DNA of 64,000 nucleotides from Octopus sinensis (lineage: Eukaryota), in NCBI RefSeq assembly GCF_006345805.1, contig NC_043023.1, forward strand, positions 18,476,001 through 18,540,000, in the 5' to 3' direction. Positions within the stretch are counted from its first letter, which is position 1; each line of letters starts with the position of its first letter. The translations under genes were made by a program, and so were the position numbers. Below, piece after piece: positions 26,596 through 62,770 of this stretch. The notes under the pieces were generated by a model. That model saw nothing but the letters and a program-made list of their open reading frames with translations. It did not search any database and had not been told where the DNA came from.

Positions 26596-26597
26596 GT

Positions 26598-42205: not shown

Positions 42206-42407
42206 CCATGGTAATACAAAATATATATTATCTCAGACGTTCAAAGATATTCACAAACAGTCACATACATCTACTGAGAGAGAGAGAGAGAGAGAGAGAT
42301 TATAGGTGTGGGACTAAGGAGAGCTATAAATGGGAGATGAGAAAACATTAAATATTTACAAATATATACATTCAATGAAATAAATCAATATAAATGATCC
42401 AACTTAC

Positions 42408-42479
42408 AGATCTGTTAAACTGGGAAGATTTTGGAAGGCTCCTGATTCGATTTTCCTGATATCATTATAAGCCAAAACT
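42408..42479 (-). CDS. LRR exon 8 of 8 seen: VLAYNDIRKIESGAFQNLPSLTD(L)
   Basis: 72 nt, GTTACAG acceptor, GTAAGT donor, phase 2 on both sides, LRR consensus. Confidence 0.93.
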
Positions 42480-43392
42480 CTGTAACATCAAGTTCAATTG
42501 ATGAGAAATTGAATGGAACAGATTTGTGATATACTATCACATATTAGACTAAACAATTGAACGACGGAAGAAAGAAAGTGGATTACCGGTGAAGGTGATA
42601 AGCATAAAGATAACGATGAAGAAAGGAGAGGGAAAAAGTTGGTACCAATGATGTAATAATGAAGTTAATGGTAATTATTCTGATAATGATGCTCATTAGT
42701 ACGTTTATCTTTATGATGATTATGATATTGAGGATGACTGTTGGCCATGATAGTGATGGGGAAGATATTTGAAGTGGATTATAGCAATGAATGATATTGA
42801 AGATGAAGATGATAATGAATGTGACGATGTAGACAGTTAAGGAAAGATAAGAATTGTGACAATGATTAGGGTGAGGATAACGAAAAAGGCCTCATTAGAT
42901 GCCAAGATGGTGATATAAATTACAATTATTGAGATGAATAGAAAACTAGCGAAAGATAAAAGAAAATACGAAGAAAATATGGAACATAAGAGAGAAGAAG
43001 AAGAAGAAGAAGAAGAAGAAGAAGAAGAAGAAGAAGAGAAGAAGAAGAAGAAGAAGAAGAAGAAGAAGAAGAATTCTAAGTATAGAAAAGTTAGCAAATT
43101 ACATTTTAGAAATAAGAGAAGATGAAGAAATATTGGAAGAAATTTAAATATGAAGAATGTACTTCTAAATAGAAAAATGAAATAAGACTTCAATATGCTG
43201 ATCAGCGTTAATCTAATGGTAAACTCAGTACATGACATCTAGACTGGATTACAGACACACGTTGATAATCTCGCATATTCGAATCTAGACACAATATATA
43301 TATATCTAATATAGGATAAAAATTCTCGAAAAATATTTTATCAATGGCCAGCATATTAAAAAAATACCTTTAAAGGTTAAATTTTATAAACA

Positions 43393-43813
43393 ACTTATGA
43401 ACAAGGGCAAAAGAAAAATGTTTCCATGCCAAATATACCGAAATATAGATTTAATTGTCAATAACCATATAATTTATCCCTATAAGCACGCGTCTCGAAA
43501 GCAAGCCGATAGAAATTTCTAAACAATATCGTTATTATCGGATCGGTCCCAATTTCTGAGTTAATTAATTTAGAATTTTTCGTCATCAGCGACAAATAAG
43601 ATAAGAAAATAAACGAGATACTTCCTTGTACCCATGGAAGAATTAACTCAGAAATTGGGACTGATCCGATAATAACGAAATTTTTTAGAAATTTCTATCG
43701 GCTTGCTTTCGAGACGCAAGCTTATAGTGAAAACTTATATGGTTATTGAAAATTAAGTCTATATTTCGGCATTTTTGGCATTGGGATTTTTTCTTTTGCC
43801 CTTGTTTATAAGT
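43393..43813. repeat. Imperfect inverted repeat (~175-bp arms, ~75-bp spacer), MITE/foldback-like
   Basis: 43393-43566 pairs with 43641-43813. Confidence 0.85.
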
Positions 43814-43824
43814 GGTATATATAT

Positions 43825-43868
<44 letters not shown>

Positions 43869-44111
43869 CAAAAGAAACCAGGACGCAAAGGATTTTGCGG
43901 TACATATTTTCGGGCTCTATAGAACACCTTATTCTTATATCAATGCTTTTTCTTATACAACAATAAGTTGTTCAATAAAACCCGAAACATATGTACCGCA
44001 AAATCCTTTGCATCCTGTTTTTCTTTTGATACATATATACAATCACCTATACCACTAGCTGGCATATATAGGTGCTTCATTTATCAAGTATTCACCCTGA
44101 ATTTATATATA

Positions 44112-44152
<41 letters not shown>

Positions 44153-44377
44153 TGAATAAAATGGTTCGTCTGATGTGTCAAACTCACATATATAAAAACA
44201 GATACTCATATTCCCTCAGACATGACATTCACAAGCAATCATACGTTCTTATTAGGGGAGAATGAGAATATTGGGAGAGAATAACTGAGAGAGTGGGAAA
44301 GTAAGGATGTGAAGATATTAAATATTAAGAAAGATATTGTCAATGAAATGCTAGCAACAAGTCTGATCTTCACTTAC

Positions 44378-44449
44378 AATGTTGTTAAACTGGGGAGATT
44401 TTGAAAGGATCCGGCTTTGAGTTCTTTTATATCATTGTAATGCAAATAT
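44378..44449 (-). CDS. LRR exon 7 (A type): YLHYNDIKELKAGSFQNLPSLTT(L)
   Basis: 72 nt, CTTACAG acceptor, GTAAGT donor, phase 2. Confidence 0.93.
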
Positions 44450-44592
44450 CTGTAAGATTAAATTAATTTGAAAAGAAATATCATGGAATAGGTATCTGAT
44501 AAAATGACACATATTATGACAAAATAATAAGATGAGGGAAAAAGAAAGTAGATAATGATGAGGATAAATTTCAAGATGATGGAGATAATGGT

Positions 44593-44802
44593 GGCGGTAT
44601 CGTTAGCACGCCGGCCGAAAATGCTTAGCGGTATTTCGTCTGCCGTTACGTTATGAGTTCAAATTCCGCCGAGGTCGATTTGCCTTTCATCCTTTCGGGG
44701 TCTATAAATTAAGTACCAGTTGCGCACCGGGGTCGATATAATCGACTTAATCTGTTTGTCCTCTCTGTGTTTAGCCCCTTGTGGGTAGTAAAGTAATAGG
44801 TA
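44593..44802 (+). mobile_element. tRNA-derived SINE, intronic
   Basis: Same family as the copies at 7-24 kb. Confidence 0.8.
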
Positions 44803-45104
44803 TATGAACGTTGCATATGTTTTGATATATTTTCTTCCGAATCCTATTTTGGGAATATAAGGGAGATAGGTATAAGGAAAGAAGAATAAAATGGTGAAAA
44901 GAGAAAGCAGGAAACAAAGGAAGAAAGAAAGAATAAGAAGGAAGGCGAACAGGAGGAGGAGGAGGAAGAAGCAGGAGGAGGAGGAAATGGAGGACTCAGA
45001 AGAAAGAGAAGGAAATATAGAAGAGTAATAAGATGTAAAAGAAGAGGTAGAGGAAGAAGAGAAAGAAGACGCATGTGTCATGGAGAGAGAAGTGTGGGTG
45101 GGCA

Positions 45105-45550
45105 AACCATCATGGTTTGGGTGCGATAGGGATGGATCAGAGAATTGGGCAGCACGAGTTCCCTGATGTTGGTGCAGGCAGAGGGAATAGCATCACAGCG
45201 CAGTTCTAAGTTGACCAGATCCTAAGACCTCACATTGTGCCATTCTTCGAGCGTCACCATAGCCGCGTGTTCCGTCAGAACAATGCTCTGTGCCACATGG
45301 CCAGGTTCGCCATGGACTCCTGCGTTAGCACAACATCATAATCAGTGCGTGGCCGGCTCTCAGCCCGGATTTGAATACAAGTGGACACCGCTGGGATGAA
45401 ATCCTGAGGAAGCTGAACCAGGGGCTCCCAAGGCCGACAACTCATGTGCCTCATGTTGGGGGCACAGGTACCCCTGACTTTTGTGAACCGCCTCATCCAC
45501 TCCATGTATATGGCCGTTTTGAACACCCAGAGAAAGCATATACGGTATCG
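45105..45550 (+). mobile_element. Tc1/mariner transposase C-terminal fragment, degenerate
   Basis: TIMVW, ILRPHIVPF, QNNALCHMAR (DNA motif decayed), WPALSPDLN, HRWDEI, RLIHSM across frameshifts. Confidence 0.8.
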
Positions 45551-45985
45551 AAGCCCTACAATCTCGATGGACTGGATTTCACCCACTACCAGAACACATG
45601 GCAACGACCCATAGACTGTGGTCAAAGCGCATCCTAGAAATTGATTTCATCAGATATATCAAAATTATTTCTGTGATAATGAAATTGAAACATATTTCAC
45701 AGTGACACAGGTCTTGTGTTTATTTTGCAGATCAGTTTTTGTGTTGTGTGTGTGTGTGTATACATGTACATATGTGTGTGTATATATGTATATGTATATA
45801 TATTATATGCATATATCAAATAGGCGAATGAGTGGCTGAGCAGTAAGAAGCTTGCTAGCGAACCACATGTTTCAGGGTTGAGTCCCACTGATTGGCTCCT
45901 TGAACAAGTGTCTTCTTCTATAGCCTCACGCCGACCAAAGCGTTGTGAGTGGATTTGGAAGATGGAAACTAATAGAAGCCCTTCG

Positions 45986-46077
<92 letters not shown>

Positions 46078-46276
46078 TATATATACACATATATATATAT
46101 ATATATAATATTAATTAGAGACAAAACCACTATTATGCAAATCAAACAAAGAAAGATTTAATCCAACACATAAAAAATTTTATATAATTAAATATAATTA
46201 AGATATCCACTACGATCGTTTCTTGTCACTTCTATTGACATTCATCAGTTTAAAACTTGCAAAGAATGTCTTGAAA

Positions 46277-46322
46277 CCACCTGATGAATGTCAATAGAAG
46301 TGACAAGAAACGATCGTAGTGG
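46277..46322 (+). ncRNA. Minimal type-I hammerhead ribozyme motif (PLE-type)
   Basis: CCAC-CTGATGA-a-TGTCA(atagaag)TGACA-a-GAAA-C(GATC)G-TA/GTGG: stems I and II pair, palindromic tetraloop in stem III, predicted cut 46318/46319. Confidence 0.75.
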
Positions 46323-46504
46323 ATATCTTAATTATATTTAATTTATATAAATTTTTTTATGTATTGGATTAAGTCTTTCTTTGTTTGATTTGCATAATAG
46401 TGGTTTTGTCTCTAATTAATATTATATTATATTTTACTATAAAATTGGATTCAATCCTAAATCTGATTTTCCCTGTAAATTTGGATTTATTCCCTAATAT
46501 TTAT

Positions 46505-46537
<33 letters not shown>

Positions 46538-47249
46538 AATGTTTGTCTGTGTGTGTGTGTGTGTGTTTGTGTGTGTAAGAGATAATAGTGTCACTGAGAG
46601 CCAAAGGTGTCAGGTAATGCTGAATAAGTGATATAGACAGACCATAGTTAAGTTTCAGATTCGGTAATATTGCGAATAAAGGGTTCAACGTTGGTTCTAT
46701 GTCAGCGTGTGTATATACGAATTGTTTGCGTAATGAGATAAAAACCAAGGCTGTATAGATATTAGAGCATTTATAGATAGAAGGTCTTACAGCTGTTTCT
46801 AAGATATTAATTATTAATATCCCTTCATCGGATATTAATAATATCCCTTATTTATCTCTCTCTCTCACTCTCTCTCTCTCTCTCTTTCATTCCTCTCTTC
46901 TTATTTTCAATTTAACCATACTAATACATTCCTTATTTCTAGGTCAGTTTAAATACAAACCTTGAATCTGTTACACTCTGTATAAATTACCTACTGAGAA
47001 TGGCCATCTTTAAGGAATTTTACATTGCTTATAAACTCTATATCTGGATGGATTAATATTAAACTCTGTTGGACTTTTGGATTTTACTCAAAGGATATTG
47101 GAATATTAGACATATATACCATTATGCCCATAAAACGGATTTACGAACTCAATACCCATATATATCTTACATCTATTTTCTTTCCTCCACCTCACTCTCC
47201 ATTTGTATCACATCGAAACTAATTAGGACTTAATTTTTCCTCTCACACC

Positions 47250-47301
47250 GTCTCTGATGAAGGAATATTATTAATGAATATCTTATAAACAGCTGTAAGA
47301 C
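47250..47301 (+). ncRNA. Hammerhead-like motif of a second PLE-type family; variant copies at 51867-51918, 55566-55617, inverted partial 46729-46832
   Basis: GTCT-CTGATGA...AAAC-AGCT-GTA-AGAC. Each copy has a core change (GAAA to TAAA, or CTGATGA to CCGATGA/CCGATAA). Confidence 0.6.
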
Positions 47302-47378
47302 CTTCTATCTATAAATGCTCTAATATCTATACAGCCTTGGTTTTTATCTCATTACGAAAAAAAATTCTTATATATAAG

Positions 47379-47409
<31 letters not shown>

Positions 47410-47602
47410 TTGTAGACAACAAACAGGCGTTTTAGTATAACGCTCGGGAAGTGGAAAAGTCTTTAACGTTTCGAGCCTACGCTCCTCCGCAGGAAGGAAC
47501 ACAGAAAGAAACAAGGAGAGATAATAAAGAAGGAGAGAAAATAAAGAGAAAAAATAAAATTAAAAAAAAAATATGTCTGTGTGTGTGTGTGTGTGTGTGT
47601 GT

Positions 47603-47895
47603 GGAGGCGCAATGGCCAGTGGTTAGGGCAGTGGACTCGCGGTCGTAGGATCGCGGTTTCGATTCCAGACCAGGCGTTGTGAGTGTTTTTTGAGCGAAAC
47701 ACCTAAAGCTCCACGCGGCTCCGGCAGGGGGTGGTGGTGATCCCTGCTGTACTCTTTCGCCACAACATTCTCTCACTCTTTCTTCTGTTGGCCTGCTCTC
47801 TTCGCCAGCGGAGTGGCATCATTTGAAGGCTAAAACAATGCGAAGCGCATTGTGACCAGCGATGTGTAGCAACATCTGATAGCCTGGTCGATCCC
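47603..47895 (+). mobile_element. tRNA-derived SINE of a further family
   Basis: GGAGGCGCAATGGCCAGTGGTTAG A-box and GGTTTCGATTCC B-box followed by a non-tRNA body. Confidence 0.75.
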
Positions 47896-48214
47896 GGTGA
47901 TATCCATATATATACATATAAATACACACACACATATATATACACATATATACATATATATAAAGGTGGGTGAGCAAAATGATAACCCTCATGCATCACA
48001 CACCCATATATACCAAATGTATACCAACACACTCTCATATTCCCTTTCAGAGACATTCAAAGATATTCACAAACAATCACGCGCTCTTACTAAGGGAGAG
48101 TAAAAATATAGGGAGAGATTAGTTGAGAGAGCAATACAAGGACGATGTGAAGAAATTAAATACTTCGGAATATATCATCAATGAAATGTTATCACTGGGA
48201 ATGTTCAAACTTAC

Positions 48215-48286
48215 ATCGCATCTAACCTAGGAAGATTCTGGAAGGCTCCTGCATGGATTTCCTTAATATCATTTTCATGCAAAACC
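48215..48286 (-). CDS. LRR exon 6 (B type): VLHENDIKEIHAGAFQNLPRLDA(I)
   Basis: 72 nt, ATTACAG acceptor, GTAAGT donor, phase 2. Confidence 0.93.
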
Positions 48287-49120
48287 CTGTAATATAAAAT
48301 TCAGCTGAGCAAAAATTGTATGCAATACATGTGGTTAAAATTAATTAGGTGATGGTAAAAATGGATGTAGATTAAAGCGATGATGATAGCGGCGTTATTA
48401 GTGATTAATGAAAGGAAGAGGGGGAGAAGGAATATGGTGTTAGCGATGATGATGATGATGGTATTATCATAGTCATCGTGGTGGGAGAGTGAAGCTGATT
48501 CTTCTTATAATGATGTTCATTAGTATATTTATGGTGATGATGATCATGATATTGAGGCTGATCATAATGGTAGAGATGCTTTATGATGAAGAATTATGTT
48601 GATAACGAAAATAATGATGACGGTGATTATGACGAGGGCGGCGACATTATGATGATGGTGACGGTGGTGGTGATAACAACAGTACAAGTATTAGACGAGT
48701 CAAAAAGGGCAATCAGTGTTATTCTAAAGGTAAACACAGTCCATGCTTTGCAGACTGACTTAGAAACACATTGATATTCTCGCATCGATTCATGCATAAA
48801 CAACGATAAAGAAGCACACACACACACACACATACACACACACACATACACACAGGCCCACAAACACACACAGAGGCCCACACACAAGGTTCAAGACAGC
48901 AGAGGCAAAGGGCACTGATGAAATTTGCACCGAACATGACATCAGATTGCATATCCCACATTGTACAGTCGATGCAGCTAAAACGCGTGTAGGTCCAGTA
49001 AAAGATGGTGTTAATAACTATTAAATAACAGTAAAGATGTGAAAAAGTACGCTCTTCTTATTAATACTAAATATATATGTAAATATCTATCTATCTATCT
49101 ATCTATCTATCTTCTTTACT

Positions 49121-49217
<97 letters not shown>

Positions 49218-49336
49218 TATAATCATAATTGTTAAATTTTATGTTTCTAGTTCGACAATAGAGTTTATTATAGGTAAACTTATTATGTTTAAAAATATTG
49301 TTTAAATATTTCTGTTTATATTTTAGATGTTTAATT

Positions 49337-49399
49337 CACCTGAAGATTGACTGTAACTCGAATTATTATGAATTGTACAGCCATGAAACGATCGTAGTG
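49337..49399 (+). ncRNA. Minimal hammerhead motif, relative of the 46277 copy
   Basis: CAC-CTGAAGA-[TGACTGTA...TACAGCCA]-GAAAC-GATC-GTA-GTG; downstream ~200 bp similar to 46330-46500. Confidence 0.6.
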
Positions 49400-50299
49400 T
49401 TACTCTTTATGATTTATTAATCTTACAATACTTTTGATATTTTAAAATAATATAAATTAATTTTATGTATTGGCTTATGTTTTTCATTGTGTGATTTGCC
49501 TAATAGTGGTTTTATCTCTAATATAATATATATATTTATACTATAAAATTGGATTTAATGCTAAATCTGATATTTCCCTGTAAGTTTGGATTTATTCCCT
49601 AATATTTAATTATATATATATATATATTATAATATATATATATATATACGAAAAGAAATAATATTTGGTTCTTTTTAAGGATACAAAATGGTTTATAGGA
49701 CTGCAAATGTAAGTGCTCAATTGTAAATGAGATTAAGATAAAGAAACATTGATCATAGAACAAACATCAAATGTGAGTCGACGATTTTATATATAACACC
49801 ATACCTCGATCATGTAGTCATATGTAAATATTACCATGGTCTTTGAACATATAAAATATACATTTACATAAAAAAAGAGAAGGTAAAAATATATATGCGA
49901 ATAAAATAAAAAATATATATAGAACAGCCTATCAAAAAGGTAAATATAAAAAACTAAAAATTCCTAAGAATTATAAAGCGTGTCACACTACAAAAAAAAC
50001 TAATAAACTAAGATGAAACAAAATATCAAACGACTAAAAATATTTTTAAATGTTCTTTTTTACTCCCTTCACAAAACGTACGTCCAAAATATTCAATTCT
50101 TAAAACCATGGTAGGTTACAGTCCATGAGCAAGGAGAGTTCCACAAGGTCAATTCAAACAAACCTATGGCCATTTCGATTATATTAAAGTGTATAACGGC
50201 AATGTCCCTCTCTTCAGGATGAACAGGAACCAGGAAACACGCACAGAGCAAAACTAAAATGTTCATATAACGCCACATGGCTAATTGTAAGATAAACCC

Positions 50300-51240
50300 G
50301 TCATTGCAGCAAAATTTTCTAACACATAAAGAAACACCGAATTATTTTATTGCTAAACATGCAGGTGGCTGTTGTTAAGAGAAATTTATACTCGCTGGTT
50401 TCAAAACCCTATAAAATTAACCATTATTTACTACATCTACTTTTATTTCTAAACTCTTTCAGAAAAGTAGACGGAAACATATGGGTGTAAAAAGGGATCA
50501 CCTCAGTAACTTTATTTAAGCCCAAAAGACTTAAGGATGGCAAGGGATTCCCTTACACATAACCTATTGAAATTAACTGTGAAATAAGGAGCCCTCGAAA
50601 TAACAGACCATTCAAGAGAATATCTTTTAGTTATTCCTCTTTAAACTCTGTATATAAGAATCAAATGTAGTAGAATAACAGTATTCATCGTTGGAAAACG
50701 AATTCATGTGAGCCCTATACATAGTCTTAAGATTTACAGCACTGCCTATATAAAACTTATCCAAATTAACATCCTCTTTAACAAAGCATTTATATATTGT
50801 TTAATAGAGAGGCAAAGCCAATCAAGGAGACATAATACAGTGTTTCTACAATTATACGATTTACCAAAGCCATTCCTAACTTTATTACTACAACTGACAT
50901 TATTTGTCTGGCTTCCCACCTTCTTTCCTTCAGATATCCCATTACTAGGATTCGATAAGACCGGTGGGAGCAAATTGTTTGTAGCACTAAACTTAGGCAT
51001 ATAAGAGAATATCTGGCCAGTAGCAGGGTTTTCCAGCAGAAGAATACTTCCTCAGCCCTTTCCCAATTAACTTGCTTCTATTAAGAGACGCAATAATGGA
51101 GGTCATAGTTGGCGTTACTGAGTAAGAGAATTTGATGGAAGACTTATTGCAAATGCTGCAGTATTTATGATTGTTTGGGAAAATCTTCTTCAGAATCTTA
51201 AACAACAATTTGGTCAAGGTTCTTTCTCTAAGAGAAAAAG
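50300..51240 (-). mobile_element. Penelope-like element 3' fragment (linker plus GIY-YIG C-terminus), intronic; paralog ~53660-54600
   Basis: FPNNHKYCSICNKSSIKFSYSVTPTMTSII, YNCRNTVLCLLDWLC, WSVISRAPY match PLE FPxxHKLxKIFNRNxxKxSYS, CNCRxxxxCPL and WxIxxxAxxY motifs. Confidence 0.75.
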
Positions 51241-51660
51241 TCAGGGGCGAACCATATTGTATCCGGTATGCTAGAACGTGAGTTCTTGCTTTTATTGTCT
51301 CCTCTCTTTCACTATTTCGCTTCCTCTATCTATTCCTAACATCTTTACATATGTCACACCTTACAATCTCGATGGACTGGATCCACCCACTACCAGAACA
51401 CATGATAACGACCCATATATATATATTTACATGCGTGCATAAAATGGTTCGTCTGATGTGTCACACTCACGTATATAAAAACAGATACTCTTATTCCCTC
51501 AGAGATGACATTCATAAGCAATCATACGTTCTTATTAGGGGAGAGAGTGAATATTGGGAGTGAACAAATGAGAGAGTGGGAAAGTAAGGATGTGAAGATA
51601 TTAAAAATTTAGAAAGATATTGTCAATGAAATGCTAGCAACAAGTCTGATCTTTACTTAC

Positions 51661-51732
51661 AATGTTCTTAAACTGGAGAGATTTTGGAAGGATCCGGCTT
51701 TGAGTTCTTTTATATCATTGTTATTCAAATAT
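51661..51732 (-). pseudogene. LRR exon 5 (A type) lacking its splice acceptor: YLNNNDIKELKAGSFQNLSSLRT(L)
   Basis: Open 72-nt LRR with GTAAGT donor, but the upstream side reads ...CACCACCGTC with no AG; ~310 bp deleted relative to 55123-55433. Confidence 0.8.
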
Positions 51733-52011
51733 GACGGTGGTGGCGACTAAAACGCGACAGCATAATGATGATGGATGGTGAGCATGGAGGTGATGATTTA
51801 GTAGAAGTATTAGATGAATAGGAAAACTTGTGACATACAAGAATAAATTGTATTTCCTCTCACACCGTCTCCGATGAAGGGATAATATTACTTAATATCC
51901 CAGAAACAGGTGTAAGACCTTCTATCTATAAATGCTCTAATATCTATAGAGCCTTGGTTCTATCTCATTACGAAAAAAATTCTTATATATATGAATATAT
52001 ATATATATTAT

Positions 52012-52064
<53 letters not shown>

Positions 52065-52318
52065 TTGTGTGTGTGTATGTTTGTAGACAACAAATATGTG
52101 TATTAGTATAACGCTCGGGAAGTGAAAATTCTTTAACTTTTCGAGCCAACGCTCCTCCACAGGAAAGATCACAGAAAGAAACAAGGATAGATAAAAAGGA
52201 GTGAAAATAAAGAAAATAGAAAGAAAAAATAAAGTGAAAAAGTGAAAAGAGAATATATAAATATATTTATATATATATATATACAAATATATATATACAT
52301 AAATATACATAAATATAC

Positions 52319-52407
<89 letters not shown>

Positions 52408-52705: not shown

Positions 52706-52777
52706 AAATCTACTAAGTTGGGAAGTTTCTGGAAGGCTTCTACATGGATTTCACTAATATTATTTTCACGTAAATAC
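52706..52777 (-). CDS. LRR exon 4 (B type): YLRENNISEIHVEAFQKLPNLVD(L)
   Basis: 72 nt, ATTACAG acceptor, GTAAGT donor, phase 2. Confidence 0.93.
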
Positions 52778-55050
52778 CTGTAATATAAAATTCAGCTGAG
52801 CAAAAATTGTATGCAATACATGTGGTTAAAATTAATTAGATGATGGTAAAAATGGATGCAGATTAAAACGATGATGATAGCGGCGTTATTAGTGATTAAT
52901 GAGAGGAAGAGGGGGAGAAGGAATAGAAGGAATATGGAGAACGAGTTAGCGATGATGACGTTGGTATTATTATAGGCATCGTGGTGGGAGAGTGAAGCCG
53001 ATTCTTCTTATAATGATGTTCATATTTGTCTTTATTTATGGAAATTTAAGGATTTATAGGACTGCAAAAAAGAAGTGCTCAATTGTAAATGAGATTAAGA
53101 TAAAGAAACATTGATCATAGAACAAACATCAAATGTGAGTCGACGATTTTATATATAACACCATACCTCGATCATTTAGTCATATGTAAATATTACCATG
53201 GTCCTTAAACATATATAAAATATACATTTACATAAAAACACAGAAGGTAAAATTATATATGCGAATAAAATAAAAATATATAGAACAGCCTATCAAAAAG
53301 GTAAATATAAAAGACTAAAAATTCCTAAGAATTATAAAGCGTGTCATGCTACAAAAACAACTAATAAACTAAGATAAAACAAAATATCAAACGACTAAAA
53401 ATATTTTTAAAAGTTCTTTTTTACTCCCTTCACAAAACGTACGTCCAAAAACTTCAATTCTTAAAACCATGGTAGGTTACAGTCCATGAGCAAAGAGAGT
53501 TCCACAAGGTCAATTCAAACAAACCTATGGCCATTTCGATTATATTAAAGTGCATAACGGCAATGTCCCTCTCTTCAGGATGAACAGGAACCAGGAAACA
53601 CGCACAGAGCAAAACTAAAACGTTCATACAACGCCACATGGCTAATTGTAAGATAAATCCGTCATTGCAGCAACATTTTCTAACACATAAAGAAACACCG
53701 AATAATTTTATTGCTAAACATGCAGGTGGCTGTTGTGAATAGAAATTTATACTCGCTATTTCAAAACCCTATAAAATTAACCATTATTTACTACATCTAC
53801 TTTTACTTCTAAACTCTTTCGGAAAAGTAGACGGAAACTTATGGCTGTATAAAGGCATCACCTCAGCAAATTTATTTAAGCCCAAAAGACTTAGGGATGG
53901 CAAGGGATTCCCATACTCATAACTTTCACTTATTTATATTAACTCTGAAATAAGGAGCCCTCGAAATAACAGACCATTCAAGAGAATATCTTTTAGTTAT
54001 TCCTCTTTAAACTCTGTATATAAGAATCAAATGTAGTAGAATAACAGTATTTTTCGTTGGAAAACGAATTCATGTGAGCCCTATACATAGTCTTAAAATT
54101 TACAGCACTGCCTATATAAAACTTATCCAAATTAACATCCTCTTTAACAAAGGATTTTTATATTGCATTAGTAGAGATACAGAGCCAATCAAGGAGACAT
54201 AATACAGTGTTTCTACAATTATACGATTTACCAAAGCCATTCCTAACTTTATTACTACAACTAACATTATTTGTCTGGCTTCCCACCTTCTTTCCTTCAG
54301 ATATCCCATTACTGGGGTTCGATAAGACTGGTGGAAGCAAATGGTTTGTAGCACTAAACTTAGGCATATAAGAGCTTACCTGGCCAGTACCAGGGTTTTC
54401 CAGCAGAAGAATATTTATTCAGCCCTTGCCCATTTAATTTGCTTCTATTAAGAGACGCAATAATGGAGGCCATAGTTGGCATTACTGAGTAAAAGAATTT
54501 GATGGAAGACTTATAGCAAATGCTGCAGTGTTTATGATTGTTTGGGAAAATCTTCTTCAGAATCTTAAACAACAGTTTGGTCAAGGTTCTTTCTCTAAGA
54601 GAAAAATGCAGGGGCGAACCATCTTATATCCCGTATGCTAGAACGTGAGTTCTTGCTTTTATTATCTCTTCTTTTCCACTATTTCGCTTCCTGCGTCTAT
54701 TCCTAACATCTTTACATATGTCACGCCCTACAATCTCGATGGACTGGATCCACCCTCTACCAGAACACATGATAACGACCCATATATAAATATATATATA
54801 TATATATTTATACATATATATGCGTGCATAAAATGGTTCGTCTGATATATCACACTCACATATATAAAAACAGATGCTCTTATTCCCTCAGACATGACAT
54901 TCACAAGCAACCATACGTTCTTATTAGGGGAGACTGAGATTATAGAGACTGAACAAGTGAGAGAGTGGGAAAGCAAGGATGTGAAGATATTAAAATATCT
55001 AGAAAGACATTGTCAATGAAATGCTAGCAACAATTGTGATATTTACTTAC

Positions 55051-55122
55051 AATACTCTTAAATTGGGGAGATTTTCGAAGGATCCGGCTTTGAGTTCTTT
55101 TATGTCATTATCATACAATAAT
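55051..55122 (-). CDS. LRR exon 3 (A type): LLYDNDIKELKAGSFENLPNLRV(L)
   Basis: 72 nt, CTTACAG acceptor, GTAAGT donor, phase 2. Confidence 0.93.
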
Positions 55123-55692
55123 CTGTAAGATTAAATTCATTTGAAAAGAAATATCATGGATTAGGTATCTGATAAAATGACACATATTATGACAAAATAA
55201 TAAGATGAGGGACAAAGAAAGTAGGTACTGATGAGGATGATTTTCATGATGATGGTGATAATGGAGTCGGTAGTAGTGATAAATATGAGGCGGAGGAATG
55301 TACTGGTAGTGGTGATGAAGATACTGTCATGCGGTTGAAGGTGGGAATAATAATATTGGTTATGATGAAGACAATAATAAGTTAGACAATGTTGATGCTT
55401 GAGTACAGAAGAAGATGACGAAGATCATGATGACGGTGGTGGCAACAAAAACGCGACAGCATAATGATGGTGGATGGTGAGCATGGAGGTGATGATTTAG
55501 TAGAAGTATTAGATGAAAAGGAAAACTTGTGACATACAAGAATAAATTGTATTTCCTCTCACACCGTCTCCGATAAAGGGATATTATTACTTAATATCCC
55601 AGAAACAGGTGTAAGACCTTCTATCTATAAATGCTCTAATATCTATAGAGCCTTGGTTTTTATCTCATTACGAAAAAAATTCTTATATATAC

Positions 55693-55734
<42 letters not shown>

Positions 55735-56304
55735 GTGTGTGTGTGTGTGTGGGTGTGTGTGTATGTTTGTAGACAACAAACAGGTGTATTACTTTAACGC
55801 TCGGGAAGTGAAAAATCTTTAACGTTTCGAGTCTAGGCTCCTCCACAGAAAGGAACACAGAAAGAAACAAGGATAGATAATAAAGAAGGTGAAAAAATGA
55901 AGAAAATAAAAATAAAAAATAAAGTGAAAGAATAAAAAGAGAATATATATATATATATATATAATATATATATATATATATACAAATATATATACATATT
56001 TATACATATCTATACATATATATATATATATATATATACCCATATATACATATATATAAACATGCGTAAGCAAAATGATTACCCTCATGCATCACACACC
56101 CATATATACCAAATGTATACCAACACACTTTCATATTCCCTCTGAGACACATTCAAAGATATTCACAAACAATCTCTTACTGAGGGAGAGTGAAAATATA
56201 GGGAGAGATTAGTTGAGAGAGCAATACAAAGACGATGTGAAGAAATTAAATACTTCGGAATATATCATCAATGAAATGTTATCACTGAGAGTGTTCAAAC
56301 TTAC

Positions 56305-56376
56305 ATTTCTCTTAAGCTGGGAAGATTCTGGAAGGCTCCTGCATGGATTTCCTTAATATCATTTTTATGCGAAACC
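56305..56376 (-). CDS. LRR exon 2 (B type): VSHKNDIKEIHAGAFQNLPSLRE(I)
   Basis: 72 nt, ATTACAG acceptor, GTAAGT donor, phase 2. Confidence 0.92.
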
Positions 56377-56993
56377 CTGTAATATAAAATTCAGCTGAGC
56401 AAAAATTGTATGCAATACATGTGGTTAAAATTAATTAGGTGATGGTAAAAATGGATGTAGATTAAAGCGATGATGATAGCGGCGTTGTTAGTGATTAATG
56501 AGAGGAAGAGGGGGAGAAGGAATATGGTGTTAGCGATGATGACAATGGTATAATCATAGGCATCATGGCGAAGCCGACTCTTCTTATAATGATGTTCATT
56601 GGTATATTTATGGTGATGATGATCATGATATTGAGGCTGATGATAATGGTAGAGATGCTTTATGATGAAGAATTATGTTGATAACGAAAACAATGATCAA
56701 GTAATCGATGTTGTTGGTTAATTCTTATATATAAGTATAAATATAGTAAATCCAAACAAGAAAGCACAAAAAAACACAACAACGCGAGGACGTACAACAA
56801 ATATAGTATTATTGGACGCTCAGGAAAGAAGGAAAGAAGGAGGGTTTAGCGTTTCGAGCGGAGCTCTTAATCGGAAACATAGAAAAAGGAAAGATTTAAG
56901 GAAGGGAAGAAAGGAAAAAAAATCTCCAACGGTACACACGAGGTCACATTTTGAAAGACCGGTAGGAAAAGTGTGAAGAAAGATGTTTTCAAA

Positions 56994-57032
<39 letters not shown>

Positions 57033-57790
57033 GTGTGTGCTTGTTTGTAGATAACAAACAGGTGTATTACTATATCGCTCGGGAAGTGAAAAATCTTTAA
57101 AGTTTCGAGCCAACGCTCTTCCACAGGAAGGAACACAGAAATAAACAAGGAAAGATAATAAAGAAGGTGAGAAAATAAAGAAAATAAAAAGAGAAAATAA
57201 AGTGAAAAAAATAAAAAAAGTGCTTAATTGTAAATGAGATTAAGATAAAGAAACATTGATCATAGAACAAACATCAAATGTGAGTTAACGATTTTATATA
57301 TAACACCATACCTCAATCATTTAGTCATATGAAATTACTACCATGGTCCTTAAACATATAAAATATACATAGACATAAAATCAGAGAAGGTAAAATTATA
57401 TATGCGAATAAAATAATAAATATATAGAACAGCCGATCAAAAATGTAAATATAAAAAACTAAAACTTCCTAAGAATTATAAAGCGTGTCACGCTACAAAA
57501 AAAATCTAATAAACTAAGATAAAACAAAATATCAAACGACTAAAAATATTTTTAAAAGTTCTTTTTTACTCCCTTCACAAAACGTACATCCAAAATGTTC
57601 AATTCTTAAAACCATGGTAGGTTACAGTCCATGAGCAAAGAGAGTTCCACAAGGTCAATTCAAACAAACCTATGGCCATTTCGATTATATTAAAGTGCAT
57701 AACGGCAATGTCCCTCTCTTGAGGATGAACAGGAACCAGGAAACACGCATAGAGCAAAACTAAAAAGTTCATACAACGCCACATGGCTAA

Positions 57791-58544
57791 TCTCTCTTTA
57801 TATAAACGGTAGTTTGTCTGTCTGTGTGTCTGTCAGTTTGTACCCTCACCCTGACCACGGTTTTCAACTGATTCTGATGAAACCTGACACACACATAGAC
57901 CAATCTCATAATTCAAAACTAACGCAGTGACACTTCTGAAACGTTTCCCCAGTTTTGAAAAAATCGATAAATTCGACATGGGGTTGAAAATCTAAGCTTT
58001 TTATATTCAACACATTTTCTGTTGTAGTTTTCGCAACTTGCAATCGAATTTCACCAAAGTCATGGTGAAGCTTAATGTTACCCTAGCAAACTTAATTCTG
58101 GCGTTAGTTTTCCGTGCAATACCTTACCCTCAGAAAGAATCGATAAAATCATGCCATTTTGGGAAATCGCGTTTAAATTCATGATGACATATTTTCGACA
58201 ATATCTTTCATAAATTGGCAGGAATCTTTTTAAAATTCACAGCGAGCATCATGTCTGCTCCAAGGAGGTATATGGCTATTTTATTCCAATAGGATACTTT
58301 ATTACTGGAAAAAATCGGTTAATTAAATCATATGTGACACACATAGCAAACCGATTTATGTATTAAACACGAACGAGAGGCTGTCTAAGGGACGCAACTC
58401 GACATTTTTATAGCCCAAAGGGACAGCTAGGAACGTCATATACACATGCGCCTTCGCTCCGTAGAGGGAAAGGACTAGATTGGGATTAGTCGTTGCCTAC
58501 TAGGGGCTCTTACATACCCGGGCAACGCCGGGATATGCTGTTAG
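57791..58544 (+). mobile_element. Non-autonomous Helitron-like insertion
   Basis: Absent at the paralogous sites (~50283, ~53644). Starts TC; subterminal hairpin CCCGGgcaacgCCGGG; ends CTGTTAG; no target-site duplication. Confidence 0.6.
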
Positions 58545-58619
58545 ATTTAAGTTAAACCCATCATTTCAGCAAAATTTTGTAAAACATAAAGAAACATCGA
58601 ATTATTTTATTGCTAAACA

Positions 58620-61600
58620 GGCAACTTGAATTTCTACAACCAACTTGAATTCCTTTTATGGTATTCTAAAACCTTCCCTTACCCTCATTCCTAAAACTAA
58701 AAAATTCTTATAGCAGTCTGACGTTGGATTTGCAAGCTTTCTAGCATACATTGCATTCAACGGTCTACACAGACATATAGGCAAAATAGTTGGAGGTTCG
58801 TTTTCCATGCGTTCGCAGATGTGATTTGAGGCCAGCAAAAGACAGGCATGATATGTCACAGACTGTACATACAAAAGGTCATTGTCATTCACCTTTTCGA
58901 TCGTTACATTCTTCCTTAGATCTCGTTTGAGTCTTATTTGCGTTATCCTCACCCCACTCCACACCTTTGTTCGCCATCCAACTCGATCCGAAGCAAGGGT
59001 TTCTATATCTTCTGGAACCATTCCAAGTGACTTCATAGTAGTCCTTATACAGTCCTTAAACCTCTTTTTAGATTTACGCCAATAGCATTCCCCCTCTGCA
59101 AACTCACCATGAAACAGCTGTTTCGGCATGCGTTCATCTGCCGTTCGAACAATACGGCTACACCATCTCAATTGGTTCCTCAAAATCATAGCTTTAATCG
59201 AGGTGATGCCTGCAGATGCAAGGACATCTGTGTTTGGAATAAAAGAACTCCATTTAATTTTTAAAATGCGCTGAAGGCATTTTTGGTGGAATTGTTGTAA
59301 CAGTTTAAAATACCTTTCATAACAAGTCCAAGTTTCACAGGAATACAACAGGGATGGTAAGACAAATGATATTAAAGTCACAGCTTTGTATTCTTATTTA
59401 TATTTCGCTGGTACCAAACGCGTTACACCAAGCCACCAAATGCTTTTGCTGCCCTTTGAATTCGCTGCTGTATTTCTGTATCAAGATTTCCATCATTTTG
59501 AAGAGAGCCTCCAAGTTAGACGAACGAATCAACAGCCGCGAGTAACTTTCCCTTGACAAAAATTTTAGTGTGGTTACAAACAGCACCACACACAGGGTGA
59601 TGCATAACAACTGTTTTTTTTTCAAGTCGATGGTCAAACCAAAATCAACACAAGCAGAGACAAATGCAGATACCAGAGACTGCAGACCTGTTTGAGAATT
59701 ACTGACAAGATCGCAATCTTCAGCATACAAAAGTTCCCTAATGAATGAAGTAAAAACCTTCGTTTTCAATTTCAGTCTGGTCAGATTATAAACATTCCCT
59801 GTTGTTCGATATTTTATGTAAATACCCTCCTCAGAGTTTTAAAAAGCAATATATATTGCTGTTGCAATATATATTGCAAAGAGGGTGGGTGCATAAAGGT
59901 CACCTTGCTTTACTCCATGTTCCACAACAAAAGATTTCGATGGCCTACCACTATAATTAACTCTAGCTTTTATATCTTAATGCAAAGCTCTGACCATATT
60001 TACAAATTTTTCAGGGCAACATTTTCCCTCAGAATTAGTCACAGAGCCTTTCGATTAACAGTTTCGAATGCGTTGCTCAAATCAACAAAGCAATGGTATA
60101 GAGGAAAATTCTGTTTAATGCACTTTTCTAGTAATTGTCTGACAGTAAAGATACAATCATCCTGGAGGAACGAAAACCACTCTAAGATTCAGACACTATA
60201 TTTGGAACTATGAAGATATTTAAACGCTCTAACCACAGACGAAACCGAAATCCCACGAAAATTACCACACAGATCCTTTGGCTCCGATTTCTTCGAGGAG
60301 ACTAAAATGGCATCAATCCAAGGACTGAGAAAGAAGTGTATTGTGCCTACGTTTTGCTTTTCTAAAAGTAGATTATGAATTTCTGCTGATCTATCTGAGT
60401 ACCAGTCACTGGATTTAGGAGATTTAAATCCTATTGACGAACTTGCAGCCTGAAATACTTTTGTTCTGAAATCTTCCAATAGATTGTTTGGGTCAAGATT
60501 GATACTTTCTATAGCATCGTGGAATCTTTGCAAGTTGCTTGATCAATTAATGTTTACAAATTTTAACTTTTTAAGTACGTTAGGACAAGACTGTCGATAT
60601 TGTAGGCATTATCGGAAAATCTATTTTTCCACGCACTAGATAATGGTCAGTTCAGCTTTCTGCTCTACTCATGACCTGGATGCTAGAAACGTCTTTCATA
60701 TCACGTTTCCTGATCAGAATATTATCTATGAGATGCCAGTGCTTAGATCTTGGGTACAACCAGGTGGTTTTATATTTATTTATCTGCTTAAACAGACTGA
60801 TGGTGACAACCAGATTATTCTCAGAACAAATCGTCAAAAGAGCTACTCCATTTTTATTGCATTATCCAATCTCACATCGACCTAAACCAGGCTATGAAAC
60901 GTAGTCCTTTCCACCTCTTACATTGAAATCTCCCAATATAACCGGCTTGTCAGAAATTGGTACTTTCCTCAAAATTGTGCTAGATCGTCAAAAATCTGTC
61001 CTACAGTTTCATCAGAATGGGACATTGTTGGCGTATAAATACTGACAACGGTAAGAAACCTACCATTTGTCAGTTTAATATGGCATGACGTGGTTCGTTC
61101 AGATATACCACTTGGAAGCTCTGCAATGGAGGATACTAATGAATTCTTGAGAGCAAATCCAACACCAGATTCTCTACGTTGACCCTTGTGTATGCCTCTC
61201 CAAAAGATAGTATATCCATAAGTAGGTTCATTTACTTGACCCTTACCAGAGAGACCAATTTCAAAGAGCGCAACTATATCAAGAAAATATTTCTTGAGCT
61301 CACATGCAGTAAGTGCAGTACACCTTTCTGGCTTCTTGTTGAAATTATCATCGAGACGTGTGCGCACATTGCAGAAACCAAAATTCAAAGGATGTCTATT
61401 TTGCTTTTCCTTGAAGATTGTTTGACCACAGTGGCAGGAGGACGACCGGGTCCAGCCTGTGATACACTGGGACACCTGCCGAGCTAGACCTGTTCCACTG
61501 ACGTTCCCAATCCTTTTTTGCCATTTACTGAATCTGTTTGTGACATCTTAGAGTAAGTTACAAGTACATTTTTAGGTTTCTGCCAACCAACCAATTCAAT

Positions 61601-61860
61601 GATTTTGCTATGGAGTACAGGAAGTACCTGTGCAGATGAATAATTTTCAGTGGGTGTAGCTTGCACTGCAATATTGGCCCAAGAAGACTTTCGCCAGTGT
61701 GACATGAAAATTGACAAAACCAGGAACATCCAAGACCTCAGGTTTTATTTCGGAGATTTCCTTCTCCTAGGTAGATTACCAACCAAGATTAAAGAGCTTC
61801 TATAAGCCCATGACGTAAGCTATCCCATCCCAGACACCAAAGCGACACTCAGACATTCTA
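58620..61860 (-). mobile_element. Near-full-length, heavily decayed RTE-clade (BovB-like) LINE in an intron of the LRR gene
   Basis: APE start LNFGFCNVRTRLDD...KPERCTAL...GVGFALK; HWHLIDNIL; RT GVKQGDLYAPTLF, LLYAEDCDLV; LPSLLYSCETW...RNQLRW...ERMPKQLF. Many frameshifts. Confidence 0.88.
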
Positions 61861-62461
61861 TAAAGTGATCAAATATCACTCTGGTGATCGACGTGGAGTA
61901 GCACATTCATAAAAAAAGGAAGGTACGATATGTGATTTGAAAATGTAAATAAGTATTATATATAAATATAAAAAAGTAAAAGATATGCGATAAATATAAA
62001 TGTATATATAAAAGTATACATATATATACACATATAGAGAAATAAAAAGGTATGATGTGTGAATAAACAATATTGTATAAAGAAAAGAAAAAGATAAGCA
62101 ATTATAAGATATAAAATAATATACATAAAGTAAAAATATACATATATATATAAATATACATATATATATATATATAAATATACATATATATAAAAATATA
62201 CATACATATATATATATATATATATACATATAAAAGTTATATGCACATTAACAGATATTTTGTTGGATGGCCGTTGACTGTTCAGGAGTTCATTATACAT
62301 ACATACATACATTTATATATAATCATCATACATACATACCTACATACATGCATACATACATACAGGCATACATACATACATAAATATATATACACACACA
62401 TATATATGCATGTATGTACGTAATGTATGTATGTATGTAAGTATGTATGTATGTATGTATG

Positions 62462-62495
<34 letters not shown>

Positions 62496-62698
62496 TGTTT
62501 GTTTGTATGCATGCACAAAATGCTTCTCTTGATGTATCATATTCACATATATGCAACAGGCACTCGTAGTCCATCACGCAAGTTCACAAACAAATACGTG
62601 CTGCAACTGGGTGTGTGTGAAATTATACGAAATGACAAGTTGAAAGAGCGGGAAAGAGAAGATGCGATGAATATATCAAGAAGACTGGTCTAACTTAC

Positions 62699-62770
62699 AA
62701 ATATCTTAAATTGGGAAGATTTTGGAAGGTTCCTGGTTTGATTTCGTTTATATGATTGGAATACGTTGTC
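62699..62770 (-). CDS. LRR exon 1 of 8 seen: TTYSNHINEIKPGTFQNLPNLRY(L)
   Basis: 72 nt, GTTACAG acceptor, GTAAGT donor, phase 2. Confidence 0.9.

What the first reader, a model, noticed from the sequence alone, without database searches (positions are those of the whole stretch)
42408..62770. Hidden gene made of one-LRR-per-exon 72-nt cassettes
Seen: eight minus-strand exons of exactly 72 nt, all phase 2, all with GTAAGT donors and seven with TTACAG acceptors. They splice into a continuous solenoid: TTYSNHINEIKPGTFQNLPNLRYL-VSHKNDIKEIHAGAFQNLPSLREI-LLYDNDIKELKAGSFENLPNLRVL-YLRENNISEIHVEAFQKLPNLVDL-[YLNNNDIKELKAGSFQNLSSLRTL]-VLHENDIKEIHAGAFQNLPRLDAI-YLHYNDIKELKAGSFQNLPSLTTL-VLAYNDIRKIESGAFQNLPSLTDL. 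Known: phase-2, ~72-nt LRR exons typify LGR/relaxin-type receptor ectodomains, and GRL101-type LGRs are expanded in cephalopods. Inference: any exon can be skipped or duplicated in frame, giving a modular recognition protein whose repeat number and order may vary by splicing and by allele.
Basis: partly seen in the sequence, partly recalled or inferred. Interest (0 to 1): 0.9.

Follow-up and report, generated by a model that had tools for sequence, protein, structure and literature searches.

The report
Octopus receptor gene's LRR cassette exons
The eight 72-base exons are real, but they are part of an already annotated Octopus sinensis gene that most likely encodes an adhesion-type receptor with a leucine-rich-repeat front end, and this one-repeat-per-exon layout is a known design.

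Summary
Eight minus-strand exons of exactly 72 nt are present, all phase 2 with GTAAGT donors, and seven have TTACAG acceptors. Chance would give about 0.5 such exons per window.

The gene is not hidden. Exons e1, e2, e3, e6, e7 and e8 occur, 100% identical and contiguous, in RefSeq XP_036369864.1 ("leucine-rich repeat-containing protein 15-like", Octopus sinensis, 461 aa, gene range 229 kb). That model has a signal peptide, an LRRNT, four further cassettes upstream of the window and a 162-aa tail downstream of it.

The RefSeq model omits e4 and e5. A clean deletion of about 310 nt removed e5's acceptor, so e5 is dead. e4 looks splice-competent and is unannotated.

It is not an LGR. The tail defines an octopus-only family whose members continue into HRM, GAIN/GPS and a 7TM start. 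That makes it an LRR adhesion GPCR family, and this expansion is published (Ritschard 2019).

The array grew by tandem duplication of a two-exon unit of about 3.4–3.7 kb. Differences between cassettes cluster at the xxLxLxx concave-face positions.

Single-cassette skipping is annotated in a paralogue, but combinatorial diversity is untested. This is a new member of a known kind, of modest interest.

The parts
62699..62770 (-). Cassette e1 (TTYSNHINEIKPGTFQNLPNLRY+L). It is the 5th LRR of XP_036369864.1 and a framework-identical duplicate of that protein's first LRR.
   Evidence: It matches P0163 residues 156-179 at 100%. Acceptor TTACAG, donor GTAAGT.
56305..56376 (-). Cassette e2, A-type. It is the 6th LRR of the RefSeq protein.
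   Evidence: Its flanking introns are 94-99% identical to those of e6.
55051..55122 (-). Cassette e3, B-type. It is the 7th LRR of the RefSeq protein.
52706..52777 (-). Cassette e4, A-type. It is intact with consensus splice sites but absent from the RefSeq protein. It differs by 1 aa from RefSeq cassette c3, which lies outside the window. It is a candidate alternative or unused exon.
   Evidence: The upstream flank shown in the alignment (about 50 nt) is identical to that of e2 and e6.
51661..51732 (-). Cassette e5, B-type, a dead exon. Its open reading frame and donor are kept, but the acceptor and about 310 nt of upstream intron are deleted. It is absent from the RefSeq protein.
48215..48286 (-). 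Cassette e6, A-type. It is the 8th LRR of the RefSeq protein and is joined directly to e3 there.
44378..44449 (-). Cassette e7, B-type. It is the 9th LRR of the RefSeq protein.
42408..42479 (-). Cassette e8, the 10th and last LRR of the RefSeq protein. In the protein it is followed by the Cys-cap exon, which is not in the window.
63595..64000 (-). Copy of the ~580-nt intronic element X that precedes e1. It is cut by the window end, which suggests the array continues upstream.
   Evidence: 94-97% identical to the three other copies.
57218..57791 (-). Element X copy preceding e2. It is part of the duplicated unit.
53068..53646 (-). Element X copy preceding e4.
49711..50285 (-). Element X copy preceding e6.
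58656..61475 (-). ORFs that look like LINE retrotransposon remnants, inserted in the e1-e2 intron. This reading is from the sequence only.
   Evidence: One search lists the ORFs. The two ORFs tested had no Pfam hit.
1..42407 (-). At least 42 kb of the intron downstream of e8. It contains no further exon of this gene or family. It is filled with LINEs, SINE arrays and microsatellites, and has a 100-N assembly gap at 39639-39739.

Best explanation
The eight cassettes form the middle of the LRR-coding region of an annotated Octopus sinensis gene (RefSeq XP_036369864.1, 'LRRC15-like').

Shown: the annotated protein has a signal peptide, an LRRNT, ten 24-residue LRRs, a cysteine cap and a ~100-residue alpha/beta domain.

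Inferred: the gene continues into HRM, GAIN/GPS and a class-B 7TM domain. That would make it an LRR adhesion GPCR of the octopus-specific expansion, and the 461-aa RefSeq product would be either a truncated model or a soluble N-terminal-fragment isoform.

Shown: each LRR is one symmetric phase-2 72-nt exon. The array grew by tandem duplication of a ~3.4-3.7-kb unit carrying an A-type and a B-type exon, giving e2-e3, e4-e5 and e6-e7.

Shown: exon gain, loss or skipping keeps the reading frame and always leaves Leu, Ile or Met at the junction.

Shown: one duplicate unit is decaying. e5 lost its acceptor, and e4 is not used in the annotated mRNA.

Shown and inferred: residues that differ between cassettes sit at the xxLxLxx strand positions. 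On a typical LRR horseshoe these line the concave ligand-binding face, so the cassettes probably diversify binding surface on a constant scaffold.
For: - Exon anatomy and non-chance.
- Identity with the annotated protein: P0163 contains e1-e3 and e6-e8 exactly and in order. It is XP_036369864.1 on a 21.3-Mb scaffold, with a 229-kb gene range.
- Domains: LRRNT plus LRR_8 at 5.8e-65, and no Pfam match for the tail.
- Family: tail-based searches return only Octopus proteins. They are named adhesion GPCR G6-like, ADGRA2/3 GAIN domain-containing, slit-like and SLITRK-like.
- Family domains: GPS at 8.6e-14 and 2.9e-12. HRM at 0.013-0.048 at the same place in five members. GAIN at 8e-4. A 7TM start in P0215.
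- Link from this gene to HRM and GAIN: unplaced O. sinensis scaffold L002 carries two exons whose amino-acid sequence is identical to the last two shared exons of P0163. They are spliced GAA A|GTAAGT...CAG|TG into HRM and GAIN exons.
- Tandem unit.
- e5 deletion.
- Variable positions: the entropy maxima are at LRR positions 8, 3, 7, 2 and 5.
- Exon versus intron divergence: A-type exons diverged more than their introns for e2-e4 (p = 2e-4) and e4-e6 (p = 3e-5).
- Same cassette design in two paralogous loci.
- Literature: an octopus-specific adhesion-GPCR expansion with LRRs, co-localised genes, positive selection, and expression in axial nerve cord, suckers and skin (PMC6408891).
Against: - The RefSeq product ends with a stop (DEM-AVW*) and has no TM segment. 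For this exact gene, GAIN/GPS and 7TM were not seen.
- The link through L002 rests on amino-acid identity over about 74 residues on an unplaced scaffold. That scaffold could be a very recent paralogue rather than the same locus.
- The HRM Pfam hits are below the curated cut-off.
- The excess of exon over intron divergence is not significant for e2-e6 (p = 0.06) and is absent for B-type exons. It could reflect intron homogenisation rather than positive selection.
- The concave-face reading is by analogy with solved LRR proteins. It was not modelled here.
Confidence: 0.7

Rival explanations
1. The gene encodes only a secreted LRR protein, as the RefSeq model says: signal peptide, LRRNT, 10 LRRs, a cap and a small domain, with no membrane anchor and no GPCR part.
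For: XP_036369864.1 ends in a stop and has no hydrophobic segment. Several family models are also LRR-only.
Against: Most such models stop at contig ends or by reading into an intron. Identical terminal exons on L002 splice onward to HRM and GAIN. Single paralogue models join LRRs to HRM (P0186), and HRM to GPS (P0189). The two readings can coexist, because soluble N-terminal isoforms made through alternative 3' exons are common in mouse adhesion GPCRs (PMC6667449).
Confidence: 0.2
2. One reading: the cassettes are the ectodomain of an LGR/relaxin/GRL101-type class-A receptor.
For: 72-nt phase-2 LRR exons occur in gonadotropin-receptor genes (cited in PMC11378527). LGR4, LGR5 and RXFP1 are among the many solved LRR proteins that match.
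Against: The PDB matches are generic. LRRC15, TLR3, IGFALS and LRIG1 score as well or better. There is no LDLa, hinge or 7tm_1 in the annotated protein, and no relatives of that type. All tail relatives are adhesion-type with HRM and GPS. The same exon design occurs in Slit and ROCO genes.
Confidence: 0.02
3. The array is a combinatorial diversity generator. Many cassette combinations are produced by regulated alternative splicing, or vary between alleles, giving a repertoire of recognition surfaces.
For: Frame-neutral cassettes and tolerant junction codons. Conserved intron flanks around each exon. An intact but unannotated e4. RefSeq isoforms X1-X3 of a paralogue each lack one cassette. There are precedents in brown-algal ROCO and NLRP3 (PMC11378527, PMC6642158).
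Against: Only one isoform is annotated for this gene. The paralogue's variants are single-exon skips, not a repertoire. Flank conservation is explained by recent duplication. There is no evidence for reordering, which splicing cannot do. No transcript or population data were available.
Confidence: 0.12

Closest known systems
Octopus-specific adhesion GPCR expansion ('group 3' of Ritschard et al. 2019, PMC6408891); vertebrate ADGRA2/3 (GPR124/125) as the architectural analogue
   Same: N-terminal LRRs with LRRNT and a Cys cap, then HRM, GAIN/GPS and a class-B 7TM in family members. Genes are clustered. The published family is octopus-restricted with signs of positive selection.
   Different: For this gene the GAIN and 7TM part was not seen directly. 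The family has about 10 or more LRRs rather than the 4 of ADGRA. It has a ferredoxin-like ~100-aa domain, and in some members a Ly6/uPAR-like Cys-rich insert, where ADGRA has an Ig domain. The paper did not describe the cassette-exon array.
One-LRR-per-exon genes with 72-nt phase-2 exons: gonadotropin/LGR receptors, Slit, brown-algal ROCO
   Same: Exon length, phase symmetry, growth by exon duplication, and in-frame skipping. ROCO also shows diversifying selection and alternative splicing of LRR exons (PMC11378527). LRR exon modularity as a precondition for splicing is described in PMC6642158.
   Different: The protein families and downstream domains differ. Here duplication is of a two-exon unit with its introns, and the unit copies are still 88-92% identical, with the 240-300 nt of intron next to the A-type exons 92-94% identical.
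Octopus sinensis paralogue 'LRRC4-like' isoforms X1-X3 (P0007, P0018, P0015; scaffold VCDQ01005429.1)
   Same: 51-53% identity, the same signal peptide plus LRRNT first exon, and the same 72-nt phase-2 cassettes with YAG acceptors and GTAAGT donors.
   Different: It is a different locus with shorter models. Its isoforms differ by one cassette, and its model ends by reading through a donor into TAA.
Human LRRC15 (PDB 9oib), the best solved-structure match
   Same: Typical extracellular 24-residue LRRs with an LRRNT; E = 1.2e-61 over residues 59-307.
   Different: This is a generic LRR resemblance only. There is no shared C-terminal region, and the RefSeq name 'LRRC15-like' is not evidence of orthology.

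Membership tests
LGR / relaxin-receptor / GRL101-type class-A GPCR | Rhodopsin-type 7TM (7tm_1) downstream of the LRRs | tested here: not met
   No 7tm_1 in the annotated protein that carries these exons. Tail relatives lead to GPS and a class-B 7TM. The neighbouring family-type gene has 7tm_2.
LGR / relaxin-receptor / GRL101-type class-A GPCR | LDLa modules (type C/GRL101) or a Cys-rich hinge after the LRRs | tested here: not met
   Pfam on P0163 and its tail finds neither.
LGR / relaxin-receptor / GRL101-type class-A GPCR | About 72-nt phase-2 LRR exons | tested here: met
   The feature is shared with Slit, ROCO and others, so it is not diagnostic (PMC11378527, PMC6642158).
Adhesion GPCR (class B2), LRR-bearing, ADGRA-like | Extracellular adhesion modules: signal peptide, LRRNT and an LRR array | tested here: met
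   LRRNT at 1.2e-05 (25.2 bits, just under Pfam's 25.8-bit cut-off) and LRR_8 at 5.8e-65 in P0163. Six window exons are inside it.
Adhesion GPCR (class B2), LRR-bearing, ADGRA-like | Hormone-receptor motif (HRM) domain before GAIN | tested here: inconclusive
   HRM at E = 0.013-0.048, below the Pfam cut-off, at the equivalent place in five family members. These include P0185, whose first exons are identical to this gene's last exons.
Adhesion GPCR (class B2), LRR-bearing, ADGRA-like | GAIN domain with a GPS autoproteolysis motif | tested here: inconclusive
   GPS at 8.6e-14 (P0189) and 2.9e-12 (P0215) and GAIN at 8e-4, all in paralogues. For this gene only the first GAIN exons are seen, on L002.
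Adhesion GPCR (class B2), LRR-bearing, ADGRA-like | 7tm_2 domain | not testable with these tools
   The DNA of the 229-kb gene range could not be fetched. Only the 7TM start in P0215 and a precomputed 7tm_2 hit in the opposite-strand neighbour were seen.
Modular one-LRR-per-exon genes | Each LRR on its own exon of equal length, with the same intron phase on both sides | tested here: met
   Eight of eight exons in the window, and the same in paralogous loci L001 and L003.
Somatically or combinatorially diversified LRR receptors (VLR-like, Dscam-like logic) | Many distinct cassette combinations in transcripts or somatic DNA | not testable with these tools
   No RNA or read data. The only evidence is three RefSeq isoforms of a paralogue, each lacking one cassette.

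The most novel reading that the evidence does not exclude
The octopus LRR adhesion-GPCR genes may use their frame-neutral cassette exons, including unannotated ones such as e4, to make cell- or tissue-specific ectodomain variants. Rapid turnover of cassettes by unequal crossing-over, with diversification of concave-face residues, would then give this octopus-only family a recognition repertoire. Such a repertoire could complement the expanded protocadherins in the arm nerve cord and suckers.
Probability: 0.15. Interest if true: 0.7.

Novelty: new member of a known kind. Interest (0 to 1): 0.33.

Why it matters
Three practical points follow.

First, the RefSeq names in this family ('LRRC15-like', 'LRRC4-like', 'slit-like', 'SLITRK-like') hide a single octopus-specific family of LRR adhesion GPCRs. 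Its models are broken up by introns of up to more than 40 kb and by unplaced scaffolds, so counts and domain tables for the published expansion probably understate the LRR-bearing members.

Second, the locus records how an LRR ectodomain grows and decays. A two-exon unit was copied together with its introns. One copy was then disabled by a small deletion, and the concave-face codons changed while the scaffold codons and splice flanks stayed fixed.

Third, it gives concrete junctions to test whether octopus varies LRR number by splicing: e3-e4, e4-e6 and e3-e6.

None of this is a new kind of system.

Tried and rejected
- A search of the spliced 192-aa peptide in the 5.8-billion-protein set gave only hits of 53% identity or less, which at first suggested an unannotated gene. 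This was rejected when the exhaustive search seeded with the paralogue P0007 returned P0163, which carries six exons exactly.
- Further exons were sought in the window with tblastn of cassettes, a DNA profile, minus-strand ORFs downstream of e8, the P0163 N- and C-termini, and eleven family proteins including HRM, GAIN, GPS and 7TM parts on both strands. Nothing beyond the eight cassettes was found.
- The LRRNT exon of the paralogue was sought in the window and not found.
- DNA for the whole gene could not be fetched because its range is too long. The P0184 and P0188 loci are not on record.
- The tail domain has no Pfam match. An AlphaFold model gives a confident beta-alpha-beta-beta-alpha-beta fold for residues ~50-145 only, with mean pLDDT 54. 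Foldseek against the PDB gives only generic ferredoxin-like matches at E of 1.7e-3 or worse. A SEA-domain label is therefore suggested by topology but not established.
- Positive selection was tested. Overall pN/pS is about 1, ranging from 0.76 to 3.6 on very few sites. The exon-over-intron excess is significant only for pairs involving e4. The strong claim was dropped and only the positional pattern kept.
- A cryptic acceptor for e5 was sought. No in-frame AG lies within 120 nt.
- The claim that GRL101-type LGRs are expanded in cephalopods was not examined.


Full report
**Observation**

With their boundaries, the exons are:

| Exon | Coordinates |
|---|---|
| e1 | 62699-62770 |
| e2 | 56305-56376 |
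| e3 | 55051-55122 |
| e4 | 52706-52777 |
| e5 | 51661-51732 |
| e6 | 48215-48286 |
| e7 | 44378-44449 |
| e8 | 42408-42479 |

- Each exon is exactly 72 nt, made of one base, 23 codons and two bases. The introns on both sides are therefore phase 2.
- All eight donors are GTAAGT. Seven acceptors are TTACAG, and e5 has none.
- A blind scan for AG + 72 open nt + GTAAGT finds eight hits in the window. Seven are the LRR exons and one is unrelated, at 4115-4186. Shuffled sequence gives 0.55 on average.
- A nucleotide profile of exon plus flanks finds these eight copies and no more.
- The spliced peptide is a textbook extracellular LRR array, with LRR_8 at 2.9e-52.

**Organism and setting**

- The window is repeat-rich octopod DNA. 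It contains LINEs with endonuclease and RT domains, 184-bp SINE-like arrays, microsatellites and a 100-N assembly gap.
- Its repeats match an Octopus sinensis scaffold at 70-82% identity.

**The gene is annotated**

- A word-indexed protein search with the spliced peptide returned nothing above 53% identity.
- An exhaustive search seeded with the best hit, P0007, returned P0163.
- P0163 is 461 aa. It contains e1, e2, e3, e6, e7 and e8 exactly and contiguously.
- P0163 is RefSeq XP_036369864.1, [quoted passage not shown], on a 21.3-Mb scaffold. Its gene range is 229 kb.
- The protein begins with a signal peptide and an LRRNT. Four cassettes (c1-c4) follow that lie upstream of the window, then e1-e3 and e6-e8.
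- It ends with a 162-residue tail: a CxC...C...C cap and a domain of about 100 residues. The tail has no Pfam match and is not in the window.
- The intron after e8 is therefore at least 42 kb long.
- "Hidden" is not correct, although e4 and e5 are not in the model.

**e4 and e5**

- Against the e3 unit, the e5 unit has a clean deletion of about 310 nt. It ends at the first bases of the exon and removes the acceptor and polypyrimidine tract.
- No in-frame AG lies within 120 nt upstream of e5. e5 is a dead cassette.
- The upstream flank of e4 shown in the alignment (about 50 nt) is identical to that of e2 and e6, and e4 has the same donor. e4 also differs by one residue from the used cassette c3.
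- e4 therefore looks splice-competent. It is either an unannotated alternative cassette or a recently idled one. Skipping both e4 and e5 keeps the frame.

**How the array was built**

- About 150 nt upstream and 250 nt downstream of each exon are homologous between cassettes. They fall into A-type (e2, e4, e6) and B-type (e3, e5, e7). e1 and e8 are more distant.
- Self-comparison shows a tandem unit of about 3.4-3.7 kb carrying one A and one B exon, with blocks 88-92% identical. A ~580-nt element X, 94-97% identical between copies, sits before e1, e2, e4 and e6.
- The X copy at 63595-64000 is cut by the window end. This suggests the array continues upstream, where c1-c4 must lie.
- e1 is a framework-identical copy of c1. 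e4 and e5 are near-copies of c3 and c4. Larger blocks were therefore also duplicated.

**What varies between cassettes**

- Across twelve cassettes the entropy maxima are at LRR positions 8, 3, 7, 2 and 5. These are the x residues of xxLxLxx.
- N9, I11, F19, L22 and L1 are invariant.
- By analogy with solved typical LRR proteins, these x residues line the concave face. This is established knowledge and was not modelled here.
- A-type exons are 75-87.5% identical, while the 240-300 nt of intron on each side are 92-94% identical. Fisher p-values are 2e-4 for e2-e4, 3e-5 for e4-e6 and 0.06 for e2-e6.
- B-type exons show no such excess.
- Overall pN/pS is near 1 on very few sites.
- I read this as suggestive of diversification of the binding face. 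It is not proof, because intron homogenisation by gene conversion would give the same contrast.

**Consequences of the design**

- Junction codons are always TTG, TTA, CTG, CTA, ATA or ATG. Any in-frame join therefore puts Leu, Ile or Met at LRR position 4.
- Every donor, if read through, gives xxG TAA, which is an immediate stop.
- The RefSeq model of a paralogue ends exactly this way.

**What kind of protein**

- Searches with the tail return only Octopus proteins, from O. sinensis, O. vulgaris and O. bimaculoides. They are about 32 fragmentary models.
- Their names include "adhesion G-protein coupled receptor G6-like", "ADGRA2/3 GAIN domain-containing protein", "slit homolog 1-like, partial" and "SLIT and NTRK-like protein 4 isoform X4".
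- Overlapping members chain the architecture together:
  - LRRs
  - Cys cap
  - a Ly6/uPAR-like Cys-rich insert in some members (read from the cysteine pattern; no Pfam support)
  - an alpha/beta domain
  - HRM (E = 0.013-0.048, five members, below the cut-off)
  - GAIN (8e-4)
  - GPS (8.6e-14 and 2.9e-12)
  - the first TM helices
- An AlphaFold model of P0184 gives a confident beta-alpha-beta-beta-alpha-beta fold for the ~100-residue domain only. Foldseek finds only generic ferredoxin-like folds. The topology is SEA-like, but membership is unproven.
- For this gene specifically, unplaced scaffold VCDQ01005327.1 (L002) carries two exons identical in protein to the last two shared exons of P0163. 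They splice on (GAA A|GTAAGT ... CAG|TG GTC) into HRM and GAIN exons.
- XP_036369864.1 instead ends DEM-AVW-stop. It is probably a model truncated by assembly fragmentation, or a soluble N-terminal isoform. Such isoforms are common in mouse adhesion GPCRs (PMC6667449).
- In the same assembly a 1088-aa gene with LRR_8, GPS and 7tm_2 is called on the opposite strand over the whole range. This fits a cluster of paralogues.
- None of that gene's family-type exons lies in the window.

**Comparison with what is known**

- Ritschard et al. 2019 (PMC6408891) described an octopus-specific class-B expansion identified as adhesion GPCRs. LRRs were found in 5 of 22 sequences. The genes were co-localised, showed signs of positive selection, and were expressed in axial nerve cord, suckers and skin.
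- 72-nt phase-2 LRR exons that allow exon shuffling and alternative splicing are described for several gene families:
  - gonadotropin receptors and brown-algal ROCO genes (PMC11378527)
  - Slit and NLR genes (PMC6642158)
- PDB matches of the LRR region are generic: LRRC15, TLR3, IGFALS, LGR4/5, LRIG1 and VLRs.
- The LGR/GRL101 assignment fails its defining tests (no 7tm_1, no LDLa). The exon design it rested on is not diagnostic.

**The variable-receptor idea**

- Support is indirect. The cassettes are frame-neutral and e4 is intact but unused.
- The same 72-nt design occurs in two paralogous loci.
- RefSeq isoforms X1-X3 of a paralogue each lack one 24-aa cassette. The RNA evidence behind those models could not be inspected.
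- Reordering of cassettes is not something splicing can do.
- Allelic variation and a true repertoire remain untested.

**Verdict**

- This is a real feature and was correctly delineated.
- It is part of an annotated gene of a published octopus adhesion-GPCR expansion, built on a known exon design.
- The new details are the two-exon duplication unit, the dead e5, the unannotated e4 and the positional pattern of variation.
- Interest is modest unless transcript data reveal extensive cassette choice.

Noticed in passing
window 1-6400 (+): Three tandem LINE fragments are separated by long (TATC)n arrays at 1530-1661 and 5816-6372. RVT_1 scores 6.5e-31 at 2020-2982, and there is a weak zf-RVT match at 3025-4011.
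   Followed up: partly
window 6964-7739, 18792-19267, 22205-23242, 23431-23905: Tandem arrays of a 184-bp SINE-like unit, and a 104-bp array of 10 copies built from related sequence. A single copy of the same SINE sits about 150 nt upstream of cassette e7.
   Followed up: partly
window ~8000-21000: Large direct duplications with periods of about 3.85 and 5.6 kb. The same translated motifs recur at 9295/13146/18711, 10439/14293 and 11612/15466/20967, together with TG-rich arrays of about 100 bp.
   Followed up: no
window 29814-33258 (+): A near-intact LINE: an endonuclease ORF (Exo_endo_phos 6.8e-12) overlapping a 779-aa RT ORF (RVT_1 1e-31). It lies in the long intron downstream of e8, on the opposite strand to the gene.
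   Followed up: partly
window 39639-39739: A run of 100 N, which is an assembly gap inside the intron after e8. Sequence may be missing here.
   Followed up: no
all eight donors, e.g. window 42402-42409 (-): Read through, every xx|GTAAGT donor gives xxG TAA. Retention of any cassette's downstream intron therefore ends the protein after one more residue. The RefSeq paralogue model P0007 ends this way (L001 34969-34974).
   Followed up: partly
GCA_006345805.1 locus of XP_036369864.1 (outside the window): A 1088-aa gene with LRR_8, GPS and 7tm_2 is called on the opposite strand across the whole 229-kb range. No exon of that type is on the window's + strand.
   Followed up: partly
L001 33566-33634, 34054-34122, 34658-34699: In the paralogous locus, three truncated cassette copies run into CT-rich low-complexity sequence instead of a donor. 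This is further evidence of cassette birth and decay.
   Followed up: no
window 41480-41724: A (TTC)n-based microsatellite with a 15-nt period and about 16 copies lies just downstream of e8. It gives long poly-E and poly-K pseudo-ORFs on the minus strand.
   Followed up: no
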